The notes: a model not told the origin generated them from the letters alone. Shown: positions 31,305 through 48,767, numbered from the stretch's first letter. The stretch is 64,000 nucleotides of DNA from Dimorphilus gyrociliatus (GCA_904063045.1 CAJFCJ010000002.1:1-64000); one strand, 5' to 3'. Numbers and translations: made by a program.

Positions 31305-32474
31305 ATGTATAATATCATCCAAGATGTTAAGCAAGGCAAAAGGAAGCAAATAGAATTAATCAGAAATGAACGTGCAAAACGTCTTTTATGTTTGAAATTT
31401 GATAGATTCATCAATTTTCGTCCAGTGCATAATTGCGGTATAAATAGTTTGGATTTAGATTCAAAAGAAAACAGATTGTAAGTTCTATACGTTTTAAAAT
31501 GTAAAATATGACAATATTATGCGAATGAAAATATTTTTTCTTCATTTTTCAGCATGTTATCAGGTGGGCACGATGGCATAATAGCCCTCCATGATACAGG
31601 GAAAAAGCAAGCAAAAGAGTCAAGAATTGCCTACAATTGTTTATTCACCATTAATGAATTTAACAACAAAGACAAGCACAGTTGCGGTGTCTACGATGTG
31701 AAATGGCTTCCTCAAGAAACAAACGCTTTTTTATCATGGAGTTGTGACAGGTACATAAAAATCTGGGATACAAGATGTGTTCAAGTCAATAGCGAGTTCC
31801 ATTTCTCAAGACCTGTGTATAAAATAGCATTACCTAAACTTGCCATACGGAGTTCATTGCTAGCTGTTGGACGTGGAGCTCCTAATTATTCCGTTGAGCT
31901 CATTGACTTGCGATGTGGTGAAATAAACTGTAAATTTAATGGTCATAGTCAATTAGTTTCCTCTCTCTCCTGGTCAAAAACCAATGAAAATATCATTGCT
32001 AGTGGTTCAGATGATTGTAAAATTAGTATATGGGATATTAGAAACGGAAAAGACTGCCTCCTCTCTGCCAAGTCTGACGAGACAGAAGAGGATTATAATT
32101 CCAGGGCTCACAGTGGCCCTATAACAGCTTTAGAATTTACGGATGACGGTTTGTATTTGATCAGCCTCGGCGAAGATAACAAACTTAGATTGTGGTGCGC
32201 ATTAACGGGAAATCTTGTGTACGAGAAAGAAATATTCAAAGTTTCATTAGGAATGTCAATCACAGAAGAATGTAATCCCGATTTGATTTTCATTCCTTCG
32301 GGGAATACCGTCGACATCATTAATTTAAGGGATGGAAAATACCTTAACACCCTTCAAAACGGTCAATCTGGCCGCATTAATTGCACCTGCCTAAATAACT
32401 CAACTCTGGAATTATACAGCGGTGGAGTTGATGGTAATATCCATTGCTGGAATGATGAAAAAAACTGCCACTAA
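31305..32474 (+). CDS. ERCC8: DNA excision repair protein ERCC-8 / Cockayne syndrome A (WD40), 2 exons
   Basis: Exons 31305-31477 and 31553-32474. N-terminus LIRNERAKRLLCLKF...HNCGINSLDLDSKENR|FMLSGGHDG parallels the CSA pattern H.GGINTLDI...RYMLSGGSDG; also IASGSDD..I.IWDIR and RAHSGPI. Confidence 0.9.
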
Positions 32475-32974
32475 AATACTCTTTAATATTCGTCAAAATT
32501 TGTCATTTGGAAAAATTTTAACCTTTTGGTTCCACTATTTTAACGTTTTCAAGAAGACTTTTGTATTATAAAAAAAAAGAAAAAAATATCAATTTACACT
32601 GAAACTGTAAATGTCTGTAAAATAAAAATCAATAAAAACCGCTTCTCATTTTAAGGAAACACATGGTTTATTTGACCGTTAAATTACCTCTCTCTTAACG
32701 ATTTTCAGTCAGCATGAAACGGGAAAATGCCATTATGAACATATGGCGAATAAAATTATTTAATAGGTAACAAAACGATCAAGTATGTATATTTATTATC
32801 CCACATTGTTCACTCTTTGAAAAACAGCTAATAAAATCGAATTTTTTGATAAATTACTGATTAATTATCTGGTTTACACGCGGGTATATTTTTGTTTTGT
32901 AATATAAAATAACTAAGAATTTATGATAATAAAAAAAACACAACAAAACATGATAGATGGCATTGCAAGCAACA

Positions 32975-33460: not shown

Positions 33461-34626
33461 CTATAACCCAAAGGTGTTTTCAATAGCAATCAGAGCGTAA
33501 AAAATAGTAAATAAAGTCAATTCTTGATGCAATGAAACTGCATTGTCGATCACATGTAAGTCCCTGAGATCTGTCCTGTTTGTCGACGGGACAAAACCTT
33601 TTTCGATTTTTAATCGAACAGCGTCTCTTTGCGCATACATTGATATTAGGCTCGTATTAAAATCACCAAACTGTAGCGTATCAAACATACAGCTATCAAA
33701 ATAATTGTCCGTTGTGATTGTTTCACAAACTCCTTTAGCTTCGGGAATCTTTTTCTTTTCAGTTTTGATAACTAATCTATCGCAATTCGTATCACAAAGC
33801 TGATAATATCGTTGGTTAACGGCGAATAACTCCGGCACCGATATGGAGAAGGAAAGGGCAATTGAAGAACGTCTTATAATTATTGTGGAATTCATGTAGC
33901 GAATAAATATTTCTACTTCGTCATTGTTACGAAATAGTCGAATACTCCTAGAGTCCCCACCTTCGGTAAGACCATTACTTAGAACGAACGGAAGGGGATT
34001 GCTTCCAGATATGTCAGCAGTATACGATAAATAGTGCTCCTCGGGTGTGCAACTGTCAGTTGGGTGGCTTTTGAATATAACTGTCACCTGTTCAAATGAA
34101 GAGAAGTTAGATATTATGCAATAAATGATTGCTTGTGATATAAGCTACCCCTTTCCCACGAGAATTATCTTTGATTAATCTTTAAATAGAAAATATATTT
34201 TATTGGACAGAAAATTATCATTGATAAGGCACGCGGATCCGATTCTGATATGATAAGTTAGGTACAAGTATAGGCCTACTTCAGATTCTATAAGTACTTA
34301 AAAAGTGACATAAATAAACAAAATTGGCAACCTGATAAAACCATTTAACCCAATAGCATCTCAATTATATGGAGAGAAATTCGCATTGAGGAATAAAATT
34401 AAACTAGTATAGTAATTTAGAGTAGCAAAAGGAATTTTACCAGATAGTTATCAAATGATAATGATTCTATAACAAATTTGTTTATCGCAATCTTCCAGAT
34501 AAAGAATTGAATACACAGATTTTTTCAAATTAAACGGACAAAAAAAAATTTAATCAAATATTTAGCCAGGTAGATATAATGCAAGTTTATTCTCTGTTAG
34601 CAGCCCTTTCAATAATCACATATTGA

Positions 34627-34660
<34 letters not shown>

Positions 34661-37600
34661 TATATATATATATAGAGAGAGAGAAGAACAATTATACCGT
34701 TATAGATATAAAAGAAACAATAAAAAGTCGTATAAAAAACTCCCTTGCAGAATATATCGAATTAAAATTACCTAATAAATTATAAGCTGTCAACAAAGAA
34801 AATGAAATAAATGAAAGGGAAAAAAAATCGAAATATCGATAATTATCTCTGTCAATTGTTACGTTGACAATTCTTGCAATCCCCACCCATATCCCTAAGG
34901 GGAAAGGCTGACGCTTTTTTCTTCCAATTAACACAAAAGAGAGCTCTTTTTTTATCTTATCAGACCACTAATATAAGCTTTATGAGTTTAAATTTTAACA
35001 TCACAGTCTCATACATCTGCGCTTTTCCTAATCTATGAATAACTTAAATTACTTTTATGCCGATAAACAAAATTGAAAAGTAACGCTGGTAGTAAAGTAT
35101 TTCTATTATCAATTTAAAAAAAAAACAGCCTGTATAATCATAAAAATTTTAACTCTATTTACTTGTTACAAATACCTATTAGATAATTTTTAAAGGCATT
35201 TTCTAATACAAATTAACTAAAAGGATATGAGTAAGTATACTCGATGGAGGAGGTTACATAATTAAACCTCATTACTTCTGAATCACTTGACTGGTTAGTT
35301 AATTTCACCTTTAGTGTTATCTAACAAAAGAACAGTAGGAAGAAAAACATTATTCCACCCTTTTACAATCTGCTTTCTCAGATACTTGCGTAGAATTACG
35401 TGAATACTCTTTATTCGGTGACAGAATCAAATCTCTTTTCTAGCGTTCTACTAAATTCTAACCTCTCCTATTGACAGATTTAAGAGAAAACGAGAAAACT
35501 TTCACTTTATATTGTTGAAAATTATAGAAATACTATATAGAGTATCATTGAATGTACTTTCAAAATATTAAATTAGGAGCCTAAAGCGAAATATATTGAC
35601 TTAAATAATCCGATCTGTCAAAGCACCACAAAGAAGAGATTTATCAAATCCTCCTACCACCCCCACCCCCTACTACTTCGGCTTTACCCTCGTCTTACAA
35701 AGAATTGAACATTTAAAAGGTCGCTATTAAAAAATATCCCTGGTAAGCCTATATTCACTAAATTCAAGAATAGCTTCAATAAATGAATAAAAACATTTTC
35801 ACACCGCTTTCTGTCACGTTCTATTCAACTTGCTATTGTCATAAAAATTTGAGAAATTTGTACCCATAACAAAAAACCTCTAGATAAGCATGATCTCCGC
35901 CAATCCGCATAAAACCTTTGAAATGGATTGTCGCAATATATATATATAGATATATTATATAGTCGGATTACTTCTTTAAAAACTTGACAGAGGCAATGTT
36001 ATTTACAGAATTTACCATATAATTAACCCAGTTAACTTGTAATTTTTTCACTCCTTAAAAAATACGATCAATTATAAAATTATACACACCTTACGAAGAA
36101 CAGGAATCTTGTTTATTTCTGAAAGAGTTCCAACAACGTTCAAGAATTCGTTTTCGACTAGAATAATCGATCCTGTTGATTTACAGATACTGGAAGAGCC
36201 TCGAAAGTTTTTCAGGTGGGATGAGGAATAAAATGAGCAAAAAACTTTAAGAGAACGATCTCTATCATATTGGCAATTTTCTTCTAGACTAGCTTGAGTA
36301 GGTATCTGCTTAGGATCGAATGTCACACCTTTTCCTGAACAGCTAAAGTTTTTCATTTGTTTCTTAGTTAATGCACTATTTGACACTAAATACATGTTGT
36401 ATGCACAACTCCGATTTTCCTTAATATTTTGCAAACAATTCGAGACAGTTCGAAGAATGATACAGGCTTTTCTTTTATAGTCAGATGTCATATTCTTGTG
36501 ACGTTCGAAAATATCATTTATTTGATAAAAGTCATGTGCTTTGTTATATAAATCCGTCGAACAAATTCTTACTTGTTCATTGCATTTTGAATTCTTTGAT
36601 ACTGAAACAAAGGAAAAAGAAGAAAAGGTTAATTAAACTGTTTGCTCATAAATATATGATATTAGTGCCTGGATATTGCGTAACAAGTTTGATTAATTCT
36701 TTTTTGTTTAAGTAAACTTGTCCTTTCATATTTTAAATATTTTACTTTTGATTAAAGATTATTTATTTATATCCAAAAGTATGTAAATCATTATCTTGGA
36801 TTGGATACAAAATGTGTGTAGGTTTTAAATATTTATTCTATCTCTATTTAGTTTTTCATAAGATAACCAAATAGTTTAAATCCCCTATTCACGAAATGAT
36901 ATTGGTAAGAAGAAAAAAACCTAATAAAGCCTTCGCGATAAGGCTTTAGATGGTGTAAAGATAAAATCTAGTCTTTTCATTGTAATTATGAAAAAAAAAG
37001 TAAATTGTATACTATTCTTTTTTTTTTTAATCAATCATTCTCACTCTCAGTTAACATAAGAAAATAAAAATAAAAAACCAATTACAGGCACTTGAGGAGT
37101 ATTGGTTACACCTGTTCTTATTTTTATAAAAAGCTATTCTACAAACAATAAGATAAACTTGAAAATGATTGACAATTAAAACGAAAAGTAGAGTAAAAAG
37201 GAATTGTTTTTTTTATCGTAATCAGTAATTCATATAAAAATTAGGTATTTTATTGCGAAAAATCGTGTTCAATCTCAACAATTTTGAACGAATTTATTAG
37301 CTCTAAAACAAAAAAAACTTGAATTATACACATGTCGAACAGATGCGATTGTAACTAAACCAGTATAATATGTGTTTTTATTTAATTTCAATTGATTAAA
37401 TGTCTAGAATTTACTGTGTAATTTTAAAGAAAGAATGCTAAATAAATTATCGATCGGTGTTTCTCTTCAACTGTTCACTTTTCATTATGGAATTTTGGCT
37501 AAATTAACTTTGATCTTGAGAAAAATCAGGCCAAACAAATAATATAAGTTAAATATTGTTAAACCGACTGCTCTATTTAGAGTTATATTGACCGAACGTG

Positions 37601-38172
37601 CATTTACATATATTATTTACTTGAAAAATTTTAAGAGGACAAATTATGAAGTGTAAGATTATTCGTACAATACTTTCCTTTGTTAAATATGTGGAAATGC
37701 TATACCTCTACGTAAATGCTATGAATATTATAGTAATTTCGGATTATATATTATGTCTAAATGTACGTTGGAAAATATATTTGTATATAGGAACAAATAC
37801 AAAATAAAAAAGTTAAAAGTTTTGAATAGACGCGGAAAATTGATTTCTTTTCATTAGTACACAAAATCACGTAAAGTATATAGACTTAGGCAATATATAA
37901 ATAAATATATAATCTAATTTTTTAGCAATAAACAAAGCACAGTAAACGATCCTGGCGCCTGTTTGTCATCGATAGTCTAAGCGATAGTCGTATATTGACC
38001 GCATGTAAATAAAGTGGGCGATAAAATAGTAAAATTGTTAAAATAGTGAAAATCTCGGCTTTAAGCAACTAAATTTTACATAAAACCAAATGAACTTACC
38101 TAATGAATTTGAAGTAGAATTAAATAAAGTTAACAGTAGGAGAGAGCAAAGCGAATAGGTTTTTATACCCAT
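33461..38172 (-). CDS. RGM: Repulsive guidance molecule (RGM) family GPI-anchored protein, 3 exons
   Basis: Exon 38172-38100 encodes a signal peptide (MGIKTYSLCSLLLLTLF; phase 1). Exon 36601-36090 encodes the Cys-rich N-RGM and the start of the vWD domain. Exon 34087-33461 encodes VTVIFK, GGD, VEIFIRYMNSTIIIR, YQLC, YFDSCMFD..GD and a hydrophobic GPI signal. Splice phases are consistent. Confidence 0.9.
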
Positions 38173-42871: not shown

Positions 42872-44392
42872 ATGACCTTCAGACTAGCCACAATTTTCTC
42901 TAGAATATGTCTGATACTTCTACTTTCAATAGCAATCCTTTCGTTTATTTATGAGTATAGAAGTAATATTGAGAATGTTGGCGAAGTATCAATTGATGAG
43001 AAGGGTCTATCATTGAGCCCTAAAGTAGTTTATCATACTAAACCTACATTTAATAAAGTTACGGAGAAGTTAAAAGTAAAAATAACTCAGGACAATTCTT
43101 CAACCTACGAATTACAAGACGATATAGATCTGGATAGTTATACTTCTTTATATAGAAATGTATATAGATATGAAAGAACACATGCACCTGGACTATTTGC
43201 GAACTTATCGCTACAAGCTGGCTCAGCTTTTTCTGACCAACTTCGAGAGTCAAGAAAATCATATATAAGTGGTATTTTACCTGAAAAGGATAGACCAAAA
43301 TCTGATGTTATAACAATACTCTTATATCATCCATTCTATAAAGGGGGACCAGCTGATTGGAAATTTGGACTTGGAATGAAAGGATTTAAAGATGCAAACT
43401 GCAGAATTGACGCTTGCAATCTTGTTTCTGACAAGTCATATTTGGAAACAGCTGAAGCACTTATATTCTTCACCCCATCTTTCTATCCTCAAGTCTCAAT
43501 TCCAAATCGTTTTCCTAAACATAAAAGGCCACCGTATCAAAAATGGATAGTTCATCTCATGGAATCGAATGTTTATGGGTGGTTGGATACAGCAAAATAT
43601 GCTGGTTATTATAATTGGACGATGAGCTATCAACGTCATTCAGATGTTTATACTCCGTTTGGACACTACGAAAAACTAAATAGTGGAGAGACAAACTTTG
43701 ATGAATCGTTCAACCATGCTACAGGTAAGCATGGAAATCTTGAATTATTGAATAAAACAATATTGCAATAGACAAATTTACCTATAGGTAAAACAAAGTT
43801 CTCAGCTTGGTTTGTTAGTCATTGCGACACACAAAGTAAAAGATCGACATATGTGTCACAGCTCAAAGAGCACATTCCAGTAGATATATATGGTCCCTGC
43901 GGGAATCTCCGATGCTTCGGTCACGAAAAATGCCATGAGCTTCTACAACGCAATTATAAATTCTACTTGGCTTTCGAAAATTCTTTTTGCATTGATTACG
44001 CTACGGAGAAGGTTTGGAAAATTCTCCCCTTGAATGTTATCCCAGTTGTATTGGGAAATGTTGCCTATCAGGAATTGTTACCACCAAACTCATATATAGA
44101 TGTGAGAAACTTTTCATCGCCTCGAAAACTTGCTGAATATCTCATTCACTTAGATAAGAATGATGCTGCCTATAACAAATATTTCCAGTGGAAAAAACAC
44201 TATAAAGCTTATGTTGATTTTGGAATTTGGGACAATAATAGATTTGTCATGTGCAACTTATGTGAAAGTCTTCATACTCAAAGGAACAGAACAAAAATAT
44301 ATACTAGACCAGAATTTCATTGGAATGTCGACGCTCAATGTATGTCAGCCAAACAATTCTATAAGAATATAACAGAAGTGAATATCGTATAG
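42872..44392 (+). CDS. Alpha-1,3-fucosyltransferase (GT10), type II membrane protein, 2 exons
   Basis: Exons 42872-43724 and 43788-44392. N-terminal TM, YNWTMSYQRHSDV, AWFVSHC, VDIYGPCG and YKFYLAFENSFCIDYATEKVW (the alpha-1,3-FucT motif). Confidence 0.95.
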
Positions 44393-44833: not shown

Positions 44834-47800
44834 TTAGCTTAGTTCAAATCCTGAATTGCTTTCTATAGCTATTAAAAGTTTCTTTAACAAATCTTCTTTA
44901 TTTTGGCATTCTGGTAATTTTAATAAATTCATGCAAGTTGATGCTGTTGGTAATCTATCAATTGGACTTTTATGAATACAGAATTTAGGATGAAGTTCTT
45001 TGAAGCCAAGTAATGGTGGTCGGGAAACGCTCGTAACAAATTTCAACAACAGTCGACGCTGTTTGTCGGTTAAATCACAGCTAACAATATGCCAGAAATT
45101 TTTTATCACGTCATCTGTATCTTTGTAACCTCCTCCATAGACAGTATTAGATTTTAAGTCGTGAACGTCAACGGGAACCTGAGCTCCAGATATAAGAACA
45201 TTTAGTTCGTGTTCATCAAACATTCTCAACCAGGCTAATGGTATTATATCATCCAAACCCTGGCGAAAAGCTGTACACTGCTCTTTTATTTGTCTATTGA
45301 GCCTATAATCAGCCACAAGATGCATGTATTTAATTCGATTTGCATTCGTCACAGGTTCATCTTTTCCACCTTTCTCAAGTTCAACTACTTCCATCTGACC
45401 TGGTAAACTTGTATTTGAAATAGTCATATCTAGTCCGAGTTCTGAAACATCTCCGTCATATTGTTTGAAAGCCATAAGGTTTCTAAAACATAAAAGAAAT
45501 ATTAAAAGCATAAGTTAAAAAATATTGATTAGTCAAACTAACTTGTATAACTCTGGATCAAGGGAGGCAAGATGGTTAATATCTAAATCTGTTGTCCTGC
45601 CAAGAATTTTTGCCAAAAAAAAGTGAGCAATAGGTAAATCAACAAGCATATCTTCATACAGAGCTTTACCAAGGGCTCTGCCCACGAAGAAAAAATGAGC
45701 TGTAAAATCATCGAACAACGATTTACTGACGGGATTAGGGCATATAAGTCCGTCGGGAGTTGAAGTAAATAATCCCCGATTCGGATCAAAAGCAGATTTT
45801 AAAAGTTCTGCCAAAAATTCTCGGAATAATCCACCACCGTCTATTCCAGCCTCGTCCAAACCTGCTGCGTTTATTAATTGTACAGCGACTCTTGGCTTCA
45901 AACTTGGACAATTTTTTGCATTTAAGTTCTCAAAAGCATCCTCATATAAATAATTTCGTCTTATTCTCAATCGAAGAGCATTTGCTGAAGCATGAAGAGG
46001 TAAATCAAATGCTTTTTGACGTTTCTCTGTTCCAATAAGTCGCCTGAATATTCGTACTCGTTCCTCAAATGGTATAACAAAAGGTAACTGAGTTAGAATT
46101 GTAATAGATCGTATTTGGTTGGATGACATATATAATTGTTCATCTTCTTGTCTTCTTTCCAAAATACTTAATGCGCCAAATGGTCGAGCTGCAAACACAT
46201 GTTCATGGTCATCATAAACGGATTGTTGAATATAATCGGCTGTGACTCTAGCTCTGTGCGGTGCCAGCCAGTGATCCTCAGGGCAAAAACGCTTCCTAGA
46301 GTCTCTTGCGTGCAAGTGCTGCGAGAGAGCGGACACTGAATGAAATAGCCTGGACCAGAAGAATTTTCGCCTCTCCAGTTCTTGTTCTGTTATATAATTT
46401 TCTTGGTTACACAAAGTTTTCTTTTGTTTTCCAGTAATTATTCTCGGTTTAACATCTGGATACGCCAGATCAACAACTCCAATACTAACATCACGTAAGG
46501 AGGCCACCATTGATACTAGTTCTTGAGTTGAAAATGGCATTATTTTCTCTATAAAAGTGTTTTATAAAAAAAGAATGAATCAGATTGTTTTACAATAAAT
46601 ATAATATATTACCATCTCCTTTGAAAAATTCTGAATCATGTAAAGAGATCAAGTAATGAGAGAATAATGAACAGAAGAGACTAAAGAGAGGTACTATTTT
46701 TCCAATATGTTCATCTGTAAGATTATTACTAGCTGTGCTTAACAATTTAATAAGAGAATTATTTGTCCTGCAAAATAAAAATGTTGTTAAATAGACTCTT
46801 TCTAAACAATAACTAGTCAATAGTACAAACCCGAAAGCTCCTTTTATCGAAAATGTCTGACATACGTTCCATAGCTTTCTCAAAAAACCAACGTTGAAAG
46901 CTAACGTATATAATAGCTTTGATTTATGAACAGAGTCTGGCCTGATTATTTAAAATAATATTGCTTGTAGTACATACAAACTCTAAATAAACGATAGCGA
47001 ATTATACCTTCTATTTGAGTTTAGTAGAGCATCACAAATACAAGAAATGGCAAGTATAACTTCATCATCGTTTGAATGAGAAACAGTGCATATTACTTGA
47101 ACATTCTCATCACTGTTCAAAATACTAGCGCATTCACTTGTTTTTGCTGATTCTTCTGTCTGAATTATTAATAAACAAATTGAGAATATTATTTAAGGAT
47201 TAAACATTAAAAACTTCAAAATACAGACTTCCATATCAGTATCAGAATCTGAATCGTCATTAAAACCAGTCATTTGCGTTGTAGTATAATCTATATTAAG
47301 CATTGATTTTACCAGATAATGTAAAATCTTTACATAACTTCGCTTCTCTTCCAGAGAGAGTTGACCTAAAAATATCACATCATTATATACATATTTCCTG
47401 TTGAAAGATTGTCTACATTACCTAATGTTGCTGATGTTAACGTCAAAAAATTATGAAGGATAGAAGATGATGTAAAGTTAAATAAATGATGATTATCATA
47501 TAACAAGTCATTAAATGAGTAAATGAAAGATGAATAGTTCATGTTTTGATCAGTTGCTAAAGCTAGTAGAATGAAATTTTCAACTTGAGGAGAGGAGTCA
47601 CAGTTTAAGAAGGTTAATGAAAAGTTTCGACAAACAGAACTCCTAAAAAAAACATTCAAATAGTACAATTCAGTATAACGATGAAAATATTTGCCAACCT
47701 TATTTGAACTTTCTCTGAATTCAAGAGTGCTAAACCTTTTTTTATCATATCTAGAATAGCAGACGCTATTTCTGTAGGAGGTTTTTTTGTTTTCTCGATA

Positions 47801-48767
47801 AAATCCGGTATTTTATTTACCGCGATTTTAAGAACAGATTGAAAATATTCTGAAAAAAAAAATTAATAGAAAATTTATTATTTACTGATCAAATAATTAC
47901 AGTAAAGTATTAATTTAATACCTTTGTTTATTAAATATTCCATAATTTCATAAAAATATTCTATTTTTGTGATTTTGTCATTGGAACTTTGATATAAACG
48001 ATAATCGCAAAAAATTTCAAGCATTCTCATTGGTATCGATATTGGTTCAGTTGTGCCAGAAATCTCAGATACGCATCTAATTGTAAAGAAATTCCAAATT
48101 ATGTTACAATAACATTATAACTGAATTTTACCTACCTCACACACAAAACTAAACATTTTTTCATAACAAAACAAATTTTGTCATCATTTTGCATTAGTTT
48201 TGCAACTTCACCTCTGTGCTGTTGCAGATATTGGCATAGACCAGTTCTTGAATTTAGGCGGTCTCGATCTTTGTTCTTATCATAAAAAAATACAAGCCTT
48301 CGCAACAGGTTCAATGGGTGTTGAATTTCAGGATCATTCTTTGTTGTGATCAACAGATTAATATCCTTATCAAATTCAGTGCGCATTTCATTTTTCTATA
48401 AATAAAAAATTATTAAATGGTCATTCAATATTGCACTGTAATAACAATAACTTACGAGTCGACTCCTTACGCACCATGAGCGGTAACTTGCCTGAATGAT
48501 CGTCGCAGCGAGATTTTTCTTTCTTAATTGCTATATATCATTTTATTAATTAAAACTGTTATGTACAAATAAGAAGCTACCTCTCTTTTCTGCCTTTCTT
48601 CCTGTGTTTTTCGTAATAAACTATCTCTATCCAGCTGAATGAAAGTGAATTTTCATAAGCATGAAATGACTAAGCATAAACATTATTATTTAACAAGAAA
48701 CCTTTAAACTAGCTCCTCCTAAAGATTGTTCAGGTTTTCTAACGAAATCTCCTTCAAAGCCGAACAT
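44834..48767 (-). CDS. UBE3C: HECT E3 ubiquitin ligase UBE3C, multi-exon
   Basis: Begins MFGFEGDFVRKPEQSLGGAS|LDRDSLLRKTQEERQKRE|...IIQASYRSW (IQ motif). HECT domain contains EAGIDGGGLFREF and RLPTASTCMNLLKLP (catalytic Cys), and ends GFELS. Confidence 0.97.

What the first reader, a model, noticed from the sequence alone, without database searches (positions are those of the whole stretch)
36216..36227. RGM that has lost the autocatalytic GDPH cleavage site (reads SSSH)
The vWD start reads C-S-F-Y-S-S-S-H-L-K-N-F, aligning without gaps to the RGM consensus C-G-L-F-G-D-P-H-L-R-T-F (seen). RGMs self-cleave at the Asp-Pro bond of GDPH, and this processing shapes the neogenin-binding domain; cleavage-site mutants such as hemojuvelin D172E are functionally impaired (established). 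The gene is otherwise intact, with signal peptide, Cys framework, GPI signal and consistent splice phases. It would therefore encode a naturally single-chain RGM, perhaps a decoy or a neofunctionalised BMP/neogenin modulator (inference).
Basis: partly seen in the sequence, partly recalled or inferred. Interest (0 to 1): 0.7.

Follow-up and report, generated by a model that had tools for sequence, protein, structure and literature searches.

The report
Annelid RGM without its self-cleavage site
The tiny marine worm Dimorphilus gyrociliatus has an expressed, selectively maintained but unannotated gene for a repulsive-guidance-molecule (RGM) protein whose hallmark self-cutting motif GDPH reads SSSH, so this normally self-cleaving signalling protein should stay in one piece.

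Summary
The codons TCC TCA TCC CAC (S-S-S-H) lie at 36216-36227 on the minus strand. They sit in exon 2 of a three-exon RGM gene (38172-33461) on contig CAJFCJ010000002.1 of Dimorphilus gyrociliatus.

- **Transcription:** spliced RNA contigs join the three exons at the GT..AG sites I predicted. They show no difference from the window across exon 2.
- **Relatives:** two related worms (about 80% protein identity) also read SSSH. All four of their motif codons differ synonymously. Gene-wide dN/dS is 0.11.
- **Paralog:** a second RGM in the same genome (DgyrCDS5040) reads SASH. The scan had already noted this on another piece of the genome (s1-083417). The three proteins form a 100/100 clade on a long branch, so the loss predates the duplication.
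- **Family survey:** Capitella, Owenia and 32 other RGM representatives keep GDPH. Clade III nematodes read GSRH, which is an independent loss.
- **New here:** the BMP-binding loop (R-G-D/N-L-x-x-H) is also replaced, and the deposited annotation calls no gene at this locus.

Single-chain status is inferred from chemistry, not shown. The 'decoy' idea has no support, because I found no GDPH-bearing RGM in this species. I rate it a new variant of a known family, of moderate interest.

The parts
38100..38172 (-). Exon 1. ATG at 38172, 24 codons plus 1 base (phase 1). Signal-peptide-like N-terminus with the hydrophobic core L-C-S-L-L-L-L-T-L-F.
   Evidence: Sequence. An RNA contig joins 38100 to 36601 across a GT..AG intron on the minus strand. 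A relative's spliced transcript, P0152/L007, shows the same junction. Hydropathy.
36090..36601 (-). Exon 2 (2 bases plus 170 codons, ends in phase 0). Encodes the RGM N-terminal helical domain and the first strands of the vWD-like domain. Holds 9 of the 14 family cysteines.
   Evidence: Pfam RGM_N 17.9 bits (below the cut-off) and RGM_C positions 3-47. Matches human RGMB chain 6z3m_C at E 1.7e-6. The RNA contig covers it with 0 differences.
36216..36227 (-). S-S-S-H in place of the G-D-P-H Asp-Pro autocleavage motif.
   Evidence: Aligned column by column. Conserved in L001 and L007, with a synonymous change in each of the four codons in L001.
36381..36407 (-). C-A-Y-N-M-Y-L-V-S in place of the BMP/GDF-binding loop C-R-G-[DN]-L-x-[FY]-H-S. 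The equivalents of RGMB Arg100, Gly101 and His106 are replaced by Ala, Tyr and Val.
   Evidence: The gap-free alignment is fixed by two cysteines 21 residues apart. The roles of these residues come from PMC7354924.
34088..36089 (-). Intron 2 (2002 nt, GT..AG). Holds three islands that are at least 95% identical to the relative's intron.
   Evidence: RNA joint 34087|36090 ('cut +3'). Islands found. No Rfam match.
33461..34087 (-). Exon 3 (208 codons plus TAG at 33461-33463). Encodes the rest of the RGM C-terminal vWD-like domain, 5 cysteines, and a hydrophobic GPI-signal-like tail.
   Evidence: Pfam RGM_C at 72 bits, E 5e-20. PDB RGMB chains at E 5e-10. RNA contig at depth 135. Hydropathy.
36602..38099 (-). 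Intron 1 (1498 nt, GT..AG).
   Evidence: RNA joint 36601|38100.

Best explanation
The window carries a real, transcribed, three-exon gene of the annelid Dimorphilus gyrociliatus. It encodes a 403-residue secreted, probably GPI-anchored protein of the RGM family, with an N-terminal helical domain and a C-terminal vWD-like beta-sandwich. It is one of two lineage-specific paralogs. In both, the G-D-P-H motif has become S-x-S-H (SSSH here, SASH in DgyrCDS5040). Canonical cleavage needs the Asp side chain to attack its own peptide bond to Pro. With neither Asp nor Pro present, that chemistry cannot run, so the protein should mature as one uncut chain held by the usual disulfides. That last step is inferred. 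The loss happened once, before the duplication, on a fast-evolving stem branch. On the same branch the BMP-binding R-G-D/N-L-x-x-H loop of the N-terminal domain was also replaced. Since then the gene has been under strong purifying selection. It is therefore a functional, derived RGM and not a decaying copy. It probably no longer binds BMPs in the canonical way. Whether it still binds neogenin/DCC is unknown. Both functional points are inferred.
For: - **Gene model and expression:**. Exon depth is about 126-135 against 0-5 in the introns, both splice joints are exact, and there are no base differences.
- **Family membership:** Pfam RGM_C at 72 bits; PDB RGMB hits; all 14 cysteines and the His are nearly invariant columns.
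- **Fold:** the AF2 model of the paralog has pLDDT 85.6, with SASH (157-160) lying just after strand 150-156 and running into strand 160-162, in blocks with pLDDT above 90. Its best structural matches are RGMB chains, TM 0.82-0.88 by target.
- **Selection:** dN/dS is 0.11 with dS about 1 against L001. 51% of four-fold sites differ, and all four SSSH codons carry synonymous changes.
- **Orthology:** a 306-residue WD40 neighbour is syntenic in both loci.
- **Shared loss:** SSSH in L001 and L007, SASH in P0119. The clade (window, L001) has support 99/93, and adding P0119 gives 100/100, on a stem of 1.9 changes per site.
- **Other annelids keep GDPH:** Capitella and Owenia.
- **Chemistry:** mutating Asp or His of GDPH blocks cleavage in FCGBP (PMC10880436). 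HJV mutants at positions 168, 170 and 172 do not autoprocess (PMC4395201).
- **BMP loop:**
Against: - No protein-level data exist, so single-chain status and loss of BMP binding are both inferences.
- In vertebrate RGMs and FCGBP, blocking cleavage destabilises the protein or impairs trafficking and function. A stable uncut form here would need compensating changes that I did not identify.
The structural support comes from the paralog.
- The GPI signal and signal peptide were judged by eye and hydropathy only.
- The RNA run may come from the same culture as the assembly.
- An unannotated third RGM with GDPH cannot be excluded, because I could not search the whole genome.
Confidence: 0.8

Rival explanations
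1. The protein still cuts itself at the same peptide bond, but by different chemistry. The Ser that replaces Pro (position 3, conserved in both SSSH and SASH) would attack the preceding carbonyl in an N-to-O acyl shift, helped by the retained His. This is how SEA domains, GPS/GAIN domains and Nup98 self-cleave.
For: Position 3 is Ser in all four dinophilid sequences, while position 2 varies between Ser and Ala. The His is nearly invariant family-wide, and in FCGBP it is thought to polarise the scissile carbonyl (PMC10880436). The motif sits at a strand-turn-strand point, as GDPH does.
Against: There is no direct evidence. Serines are common, and the pattern may simply be tolerated filler. The nematode variants (GSRH) have Arg at position 3 and cannot work this way, so loss without replacement is clearly viable in this family. 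The vWD fold is not known to support Ser-based autoproteolysis.
Confidence: 0.07
2. The gene is a decaying or neutrally drifting duplicate. The motif loss would then be just one symptom of relaxed constraint.
For: The stem branch is long. The Pfam RGM_N score is weak. The gene is missing from the deposited annotation.
Against: The reading frame is open across three exons with intact splice sites. Spliced transcripts are abundant. dN/dS is 0.11 at dS about 1. All 14 cysteines are kept. Orthologs are intact in two other sources.
Confidence: 0.02
3. SSSH is an assembly or sequencing artefact, and the true gene reads GDPH.
For: None found.
Against: The RNA contig is identical over the site. Three further independent sequences read SSSH or SASH with different codons. 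Going from G-D-P to S-S-S needs at least five base changes.
Confidence: 0.01
4. It is a decoy or antagonist of a canonical, cleaved RGM encoded elsewhere in the same genome.
For: The BMP loop is lost while the overall fold is kept, which could suit a competitor for one partner only.
Against: The profile search returned only one other D. gyrociliatus RGM, and it also lacks GDPH. The exhaustive phmmer search returned no further close relative, though that library carries no organism names. The loss is ancestral to both copies.
Confidence: 0.08

Closest known systems
Vertebrate RGMA / RGMB (DRAGON) / RGMC (hemojuvelin)
   Same: Same two Pfam domains and the same 14-cysteine framework. Signal peptide and hydrophobic C-terminal tail are present. 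The vWD-like fold of the paralog's model matches RGMB crystal and cryo-EM chains at TM 0.82-0.88.
   Different: G-D-P-H is replaced by S-S-S-H, so there is no Asp-Pro bond. The BMP/GDF-contact residues Arg100, Gly101 and His106 (RGMB numbering) are replaced by Ala, Tyr and Val. G-A-W-P-L, which by my own numbering holds RGMB Ala186 (A186R weakens NEO1 binding), reads G-S-I-I-L. Identity to RGMB is only about 25%.
DgyrCDS5040 (P0119), the second RGM of Dimorphilus gyrociliatus
   Same: It lies on the same stem branch, is 45-52% identical to the window exons, has the same S-x-S-H replacement (SASH), and has also lost the BMP loop.
   Different: It is on a different contig with different neighbours. 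It is annotated, whereas the window gene is not. Its deposited model reads through the exon 2 donor and adds a segment with pLDDT below 50.
RGMs of clade III nematodes (Toxocara canis KHN88663.1, Enterobius vermicularis VDD92263.1, Loa loa XP_020301214.1)
   Same: These are natural RGMs without the Asp-Pro bond, reading G-S-R-H. They show that the family tolerates loss of the motif.
   Different: The loss is independent, in a separate starred clade whose sister Pristionchus keeps GDPH. They retain the Gly of the motif. Toxocara and Loa keep the R-G-N-L-K-[FY]-H BMP loop, and Enterobius keeps its Gly and His. I found no paper describing this.
Cleavage-deficient disease or engineered mutants (HJV positions 168/170/172; FCGBP D4080A/N, H4082N)
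   Same: The same motif is disabled.
   Different: Those mutants are unstable, poorly trafficked or inactive. The Dimorphilus genes have been kept by selection for a long time, which implies a background that tolerates the uncut state.
C. elegans DRAG-1
   Same: It is an invertebrate GPI-anchored RGM that acts with UNC-40/neogenin and BMP signalling (PMC8595726, PMC10084454).
   Different: I did not retrieve its sequence, so I did not examine its motif. The related clade V nematode Pristionchus keeps GDPH.

Membership tests
RGM family (homology: Pfam RGM_N + RGM_C) | RGM C-terminal (vWD-like) domain | tested here: met
   Exon 3 scores 72 bits (cut-off 27, E 5e-20). Exon 2 contributes profile positions 3-47. 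PDB RGMB chains match at E 5e-10.
RGM family (homology: Pfam RGM_N + RGM_C) | RGM N-terminal helical domain | tested here: inconclusive
   Pfam RGM_N scores 17.9 bits, below the 24.2 cut-off. However, phmmer aligns the domain to RGMB, its cysteines are in register, and the paralog's model has the helical bundle.
RGM family (homology: Pfam RGM_N + RGM_C) | Conserved 14-cysteine framework | tested here: met
   All 14 nearly invariant Cys columns are filled: 9 in exon 2 and 5 in exon 3.
RGM family (homology: Pfam RGM_N + RGM_C) | Placement inside the RGM tree | tested here: met
   It lies within the starred lophotrochozoan clade (96/92), next to Capitella and unnamed GDPH-bearing proteins (exon 3 region only).
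RGM family (homology: Pfam RGM_N + RGM_C) | Signal peptide and C-terminal GPI-attachment signal | tested here: inconclusive
   There is a hydrophobic N-terminal core and a hydrophobic C-terminal stretch preceded by small residues. No dedicated predictor was available.
RGM family (homology: Pfam RGM_N + RGM_C) | vWD-like beta-sandwich fold as in RGMB | tested here: met
   Tested on the paralog P0119 only. Its top 7 Foldseek hits are RGMB chains. The window protein was not folded because its exons were not joined.
Autocleaving RGMs / GDPH-type vWD domains (function) | G-D-P-H motif with a scissile Asp-Pro bond | tested here: not met
   It reads S-S-S-H, confirmed in RNA.
Autocleaving RGMs / GDPH-type vWD domains (function) | Two disulfide-linked chains after maturation | not testable with these tools
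   This needs reducing versus non-reducing electrophoresis of the protein.
RGM as BMP co-receptor (function) | R-G-[DN]-L-x-[FY]-H loop that contacts BMP2/GDF5 (RGMB Gly101, Leu103, His106) | tested here: not met
   It reads A-Y-N-M-Y-L-V. G101R and H106R each abolish binding in RGMB (PMC7354924).
RGM as neogenin/DCC ligand (function) | Binding to FN5-FN6 of neogenin through the C-terminal domain | not testable with these tools
   Only one interface residue could be mapped, and by my own numbering: RGMB Ala186 corresponds to Ser here.
Ser/Thr cis-autoproteolytic modules (SEA, GPS/GAIN, Nup98), considered for the novel reading | Nucleophilic Ser/Thr/Cys immediately after the scissile bond in a strained turn | tested here: inconclusive
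   Ser occupies the position of Pro in all four dinophilid sequences. I tested neither fold similarity nor cleavage.

The most novel reading that the evidence does not exclude
Dinophilid RGMs did not lose self-cleavage but changed its chemistry. The conserved Ser that replaced Pro would cut the same peptide bond by an N-to-O acyl shift assisted by the retained His. That would make a vWD-type domain a Ser-dependent cis-autoprotease.
Probability: 0.07. Interest if true: 0.8.

Novelty: new variant of a known kind. Interest (0 to 1): 0.45.

Why it matters
GDPH autocleavage is treated as a hallmark of RGMs. In hemojuvelin, mutations at the site cause disease, and in FCGBP blocking cleavage destabilises the vWD domain.

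Here a whole annelid lineage has kept two expressed RGMs under selection without the Asp-Pro bond. Clade III nematodes have done the same independently. These are natural experiments showing that cleavage is dispensable in some sequence backgrounds.

Comparing them with canonical RGMs could show which residues compensate for the uncut strand. It could also show whether cleavage is tied to BMP co-receptor function, because the BMP loop is lost in the annelids but kept in the nematodes.

The result also adds a missing gene to the D. gyrociliatus annotation.

Tried and rejected
- **Word search with exon 3 alone:** it found only one relative, because the length window shuts out full-length RGMs. 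I then used the exhaustive phmmer search. I also ran a profile search whose first row was a 433-residue RGM, with the window exons as separate rows.
- **Joined exons:** I never joined the window exons into one protein for any search, fold or script. That step was left out. The deposited paralog protein was folded instead.
- **RNA runs:** only one run held the stretch. It was not on record as RNA, but its contigs are spliced.
- **Apparent conflict in divergence:** dS is about 1, yet intron 2 is 72% identical. I resolved this: the intron is 40-50% identical in the background, with three islands of at least 95% identity.
- **Rfam:** no match on the gene region.
- **Literature:** no paper holds both 'gyrociliatus' and 'RGM'. 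I found none describing RGMs that naturally lack GDPH. Bell 2013, Tian 2013 and the Severyn 2009 review are not held. Two broad searches were badly aimed and gave nothing.
- **Unnamed nearest proteins:** the species of the closest canonical proteins (P0002, P0109, P0110, P0020; Logan only) could not be identified.
- **Rejected readings:** assembly error, pseudogene, and haplotig. The paralog has different neighbours and is only 45-52% identical.

Full report
**1. What is at the site**

Pfam places RGM_C profile positions 3-47 on this stretch (E 4e-6). It places positions 58-235 on the next ORF downstream, 33461-34087 (72 bits, E 5e-20). There is also a weak RGM_N hit further up the same exon.

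**2. Gene model**

Reading the sequence gives three exons with GT..AG introns:

| Exon | Coordinates | Content |
|---|---|---|
| 1 | 38172-38100 | ATG, 24 codons plus 1 base |
| 2 | 36601-36090 | 2 bases plus 170 codons |
| 3 | 34087-33461 | 208 codons plus TAG |

The product is 403 residues.

- The N-terminus has a hydrophobic core typical of a signal peptide.
- The C-terminus ends in a hydrophobic stretch preceded by small residues, as in GPI signals. I judged this by hydropathy only.
- All 14 cysteine columns that are nearly invariant in a 43-row family alignment are filled.

**3. Is it transcribed and correctly assembled?**

Only one public run holds the stretch. Its contigs are spliced, so it is RNA.

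- One 759-nt contig (depth 126) joins 34087|36090 and 36601|38100, exactly at the predicted sites.
- It covers exon 2 with no base differences.
- Exon 3 lies on a contig of depth 135.
- Intron pieces have depth 0-5.

The run may come from the same culture as the assembly, so it is independent in data type but perhaps not in strain.

**4. Organism and annotation**

The neighbouring fucosyltransferase ORF is 100% identical to DgyrCDS894 of Dimorphilus gyrociliatus. The fetched contig stretch is base-for-base the window, which shows that the window is CAJFCJ010000002.1:1-64000 of GCA_904063045.1.

In that record no gene is called between window positions 32872 and 42871. Neither protein library returned a full-length protein for this locus. 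The gene therefore appears to be missing from the deposited annotation.

**5. Relatives**

- **L001:** a Logan contig from another sample carries the orthologous locus. It has the same exon structure and the same 306-residue WD40 gene downstream. Its exon 2 reads C-S-F-Y-S-S-S-H-L-R-N-F.
- **L007:** a spliced transcript contig from a third sample also reads SSSH. It shows the same exon 1-2 and 2-3 junctions.

Window against L001 gives the following:

| Measure | Value |
|---|---|
| Protein identity | 80% |
| dN | 0.11 |
| dS | about 1.0 |
| dN/dS | 0.11 |
| Four-fold sites that differ | 51% |
| SSSH codons with a synonymous difference | 4 of 4 |

The gene, and the motif itself, are under purifying selection. 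This rules out neutral decay.

**6. A second RGM in the same genome**

I ran a profile search whose rows included canonical RGMs and the window exons as separate rows. It returned DgyrCDS5040 (P0119, 445 residues, contig CAJFCJ010000006.1).

- It reads C-S-L-T-S-A-S-H-L-K-T-Y.
- An earlier first-stage note of this scan (s1-083417) had flagged this SASH site on another piece of the genome. I confirmed it here.
- It is 45-52% identical to the window exons.
- It has different neighbours, so it is a paralog and not a haplotig.

No GDPH-bearing RGM of this species turned up. An unannotated one cannot be excluded, because the window gene itself is unannotated and I could not search the whole genome.

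**7. Family survey and tree**

Among the 41 rows of alignment A2 that cover the motif:

| Motif | Rows | Where |
|---|---|---|
| GDPH | 34 | includes the annelids Capitella and Owenia, molluscs, arthropods, cnidarians, fishes, and the nematode Pristionchus |
| GSRH | 3 | Toxocara, Enterobius, Loa: clade III nematodes |
| GDGH | 1 | an unnamed Logan protein |
| SSSH | 2 | window and L001 |
| SASH | 1 | P0119 |

The His is nearly invariant. The nematodes Trichinella and Trichuris, which are not in A2, also read GDPH.

I built a maximum-likelihood tree on the exon 3 region, leaving out the motif's own columns. It groups the window with L001 (99/93) and adds P0119 (100/100). This clade sits on a stem of 1.9 changes per column, about three times the median terminal branch, inside a starred lophotrochozoan clade.

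The GSRH nematodes form their own starred clade, with Pristionchus (GDPH) as sister. The motif was therefore lost at least three separate times. In the dinophilid line it was lost once, before the duplication.

**8. Structure**

I folded the deposited paralog protein with the 43-row alignment. Mean pLDDT is 85.6.

- It has a helical N-terminal domain and a beta-sandwich.
- SASH (157-160) lies just after strand 150-156 and runs into strand 160-162, in blocks with pLDDT above 90.
- The only long low-confidence stretch (197-219) coincides with residues that the deposited model adds by reading through the exon 2 donor.
- The seven best PDB matches are RGMB C-terminal chains, with TM 0.82-0.88 by target. 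Mucin and VWF D assemblies follow.

**9. A second lost hallmark**

In RGMB, the loop C-R100-G101-N102-L103-V-Y-H106-S contacts BMP2 and GDF5. G101R, L103E and H106R abolish binding, and the matching hemojuvelin mutations cause juvenile hemochromatosis (PMC7354924).

The two flanking cysteines are 21 residues apart in all these proteins, so the alignment has no gaps.

| Protein | Loop |
|---|---|
| Window | C-A-Y-N-M-Y-L-V-S |
| L001 | C-S-Y-D-M-Y-L-V-S |
| P0119 | C-R-S-T-T-S-Y-V-W |

Most other RGMs keep G-[DN]-[LI]-x-[FY]-H, and the GSRH nematodes keep at least its Gly and His. Canonical BMP binding is therefore probably lost in the dinophilid proteins. This is an inference.

On the neogenin side I could map only one residue, using my own numbering of the PDB chain. 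RGMB Ala186 in G-A-W-P-L corresponds to Ser in G-S-I-I-L (A186R weakens NEO1 binding).

**10. Mechanism**

Asp-Pro cleavage in vWD domains depends on the Asp side chain and is helped by the His. D-to-A/N and H-to-N mutants of FCGBP stay uncut and are less stable (PMC10880436).

Hemojuvelin mutants at positions 168, 170 and 172 do not autoprocess and signal poorly. [quoted passage not shown]

With S-S-S in place of G-D-P, that chemistry cannot run. The most likely product is a single chain, stabilised by changes elsewhere in a fast-evolved domain.

A low-probability alternative is that the conserved position-3 Ser cuts the same bond by an N-to-O acyl shift. Nothing here tests that.

**11. Comparison, novelty and score**

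By descent this is an RGM. It fails two functional hallmarks of the family, the GDPH site and the BMP loop.

I found no paper on D. gyrociliatus RGMs, and none on RGMs that naturally lack GDPH. Several key subscription papers are not held. The nematode sequences are public, so the phenomenon is not unique to this worm.

I rate it a new variant of a known kind, with interest 0.45.

Noticed in passing
window 33461-38172 (minus): The deposited annotation of GCA_904063045.1, as held in this collection, calls no gene between window positions 32872 and 42871. No full-length protein for this locus is in either protein library, although spliced RNA covers all three exons.
   Followed up: partly
window 35787-35880, 35600-35660, 34763-34884 (intron 2): Three islands are at least 95% identical to the relative's intron, with perfect runs of up to 67 nt. 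The background is 40-50% identical (unalignable). There is no Rfam match. They are candidate conserved regulatory elements or small RNAs.
   Followed up: partly
L004:6407-7069 and P0119 residues 197-219: The deposited model of the paralog DgyrCDS5040 seems to read through the exon 2 donor after V-L-K-K. This adds about 22 residues that AlphaFold gives pLDDT below 50. It is probably a mis-called splice site.
   Followed up: partly
P0086, P0075, P0083 (Toxocara canis, Enterobius vermicularis, Loa loa): RGMs of clade III nematodes read G-S-R-H instead of G-D-P-H. Toxocara and Loa keep the BMP-binding loop, and Enterobius keeps its Gly and His. This is an independent natural loss of the autocleavage site, and I found no paper describing it.
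   Followed up: partly
P0110 (Logan only, 477 residues): A canonical-looking lophotrochozoan RGM reads G-D-G-H, with Pro replaced. The cluster has nine member sequences. The organism is unknown.
   Followed up: no
L007:497-504: The transcript contig of the third relative changes frame by one base inside exon 2, after C-S-K-K. This is either an assembly slip in an A-rich run or a real frameshift in that sample.
   Followed up: no
window 31554-32474 (+), 42872-44392 (+), 44834-48767 (-): The neighbours are a 306-residue WD40 protein (syntenic with the relative), the alpha-1,3-fucosyltransferase DgyrCDS894, and a 1063-residue HECT E3 ligase. The window is the first 64 kb of contig CAJFCJ010000002.1.
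   Followed up: partly
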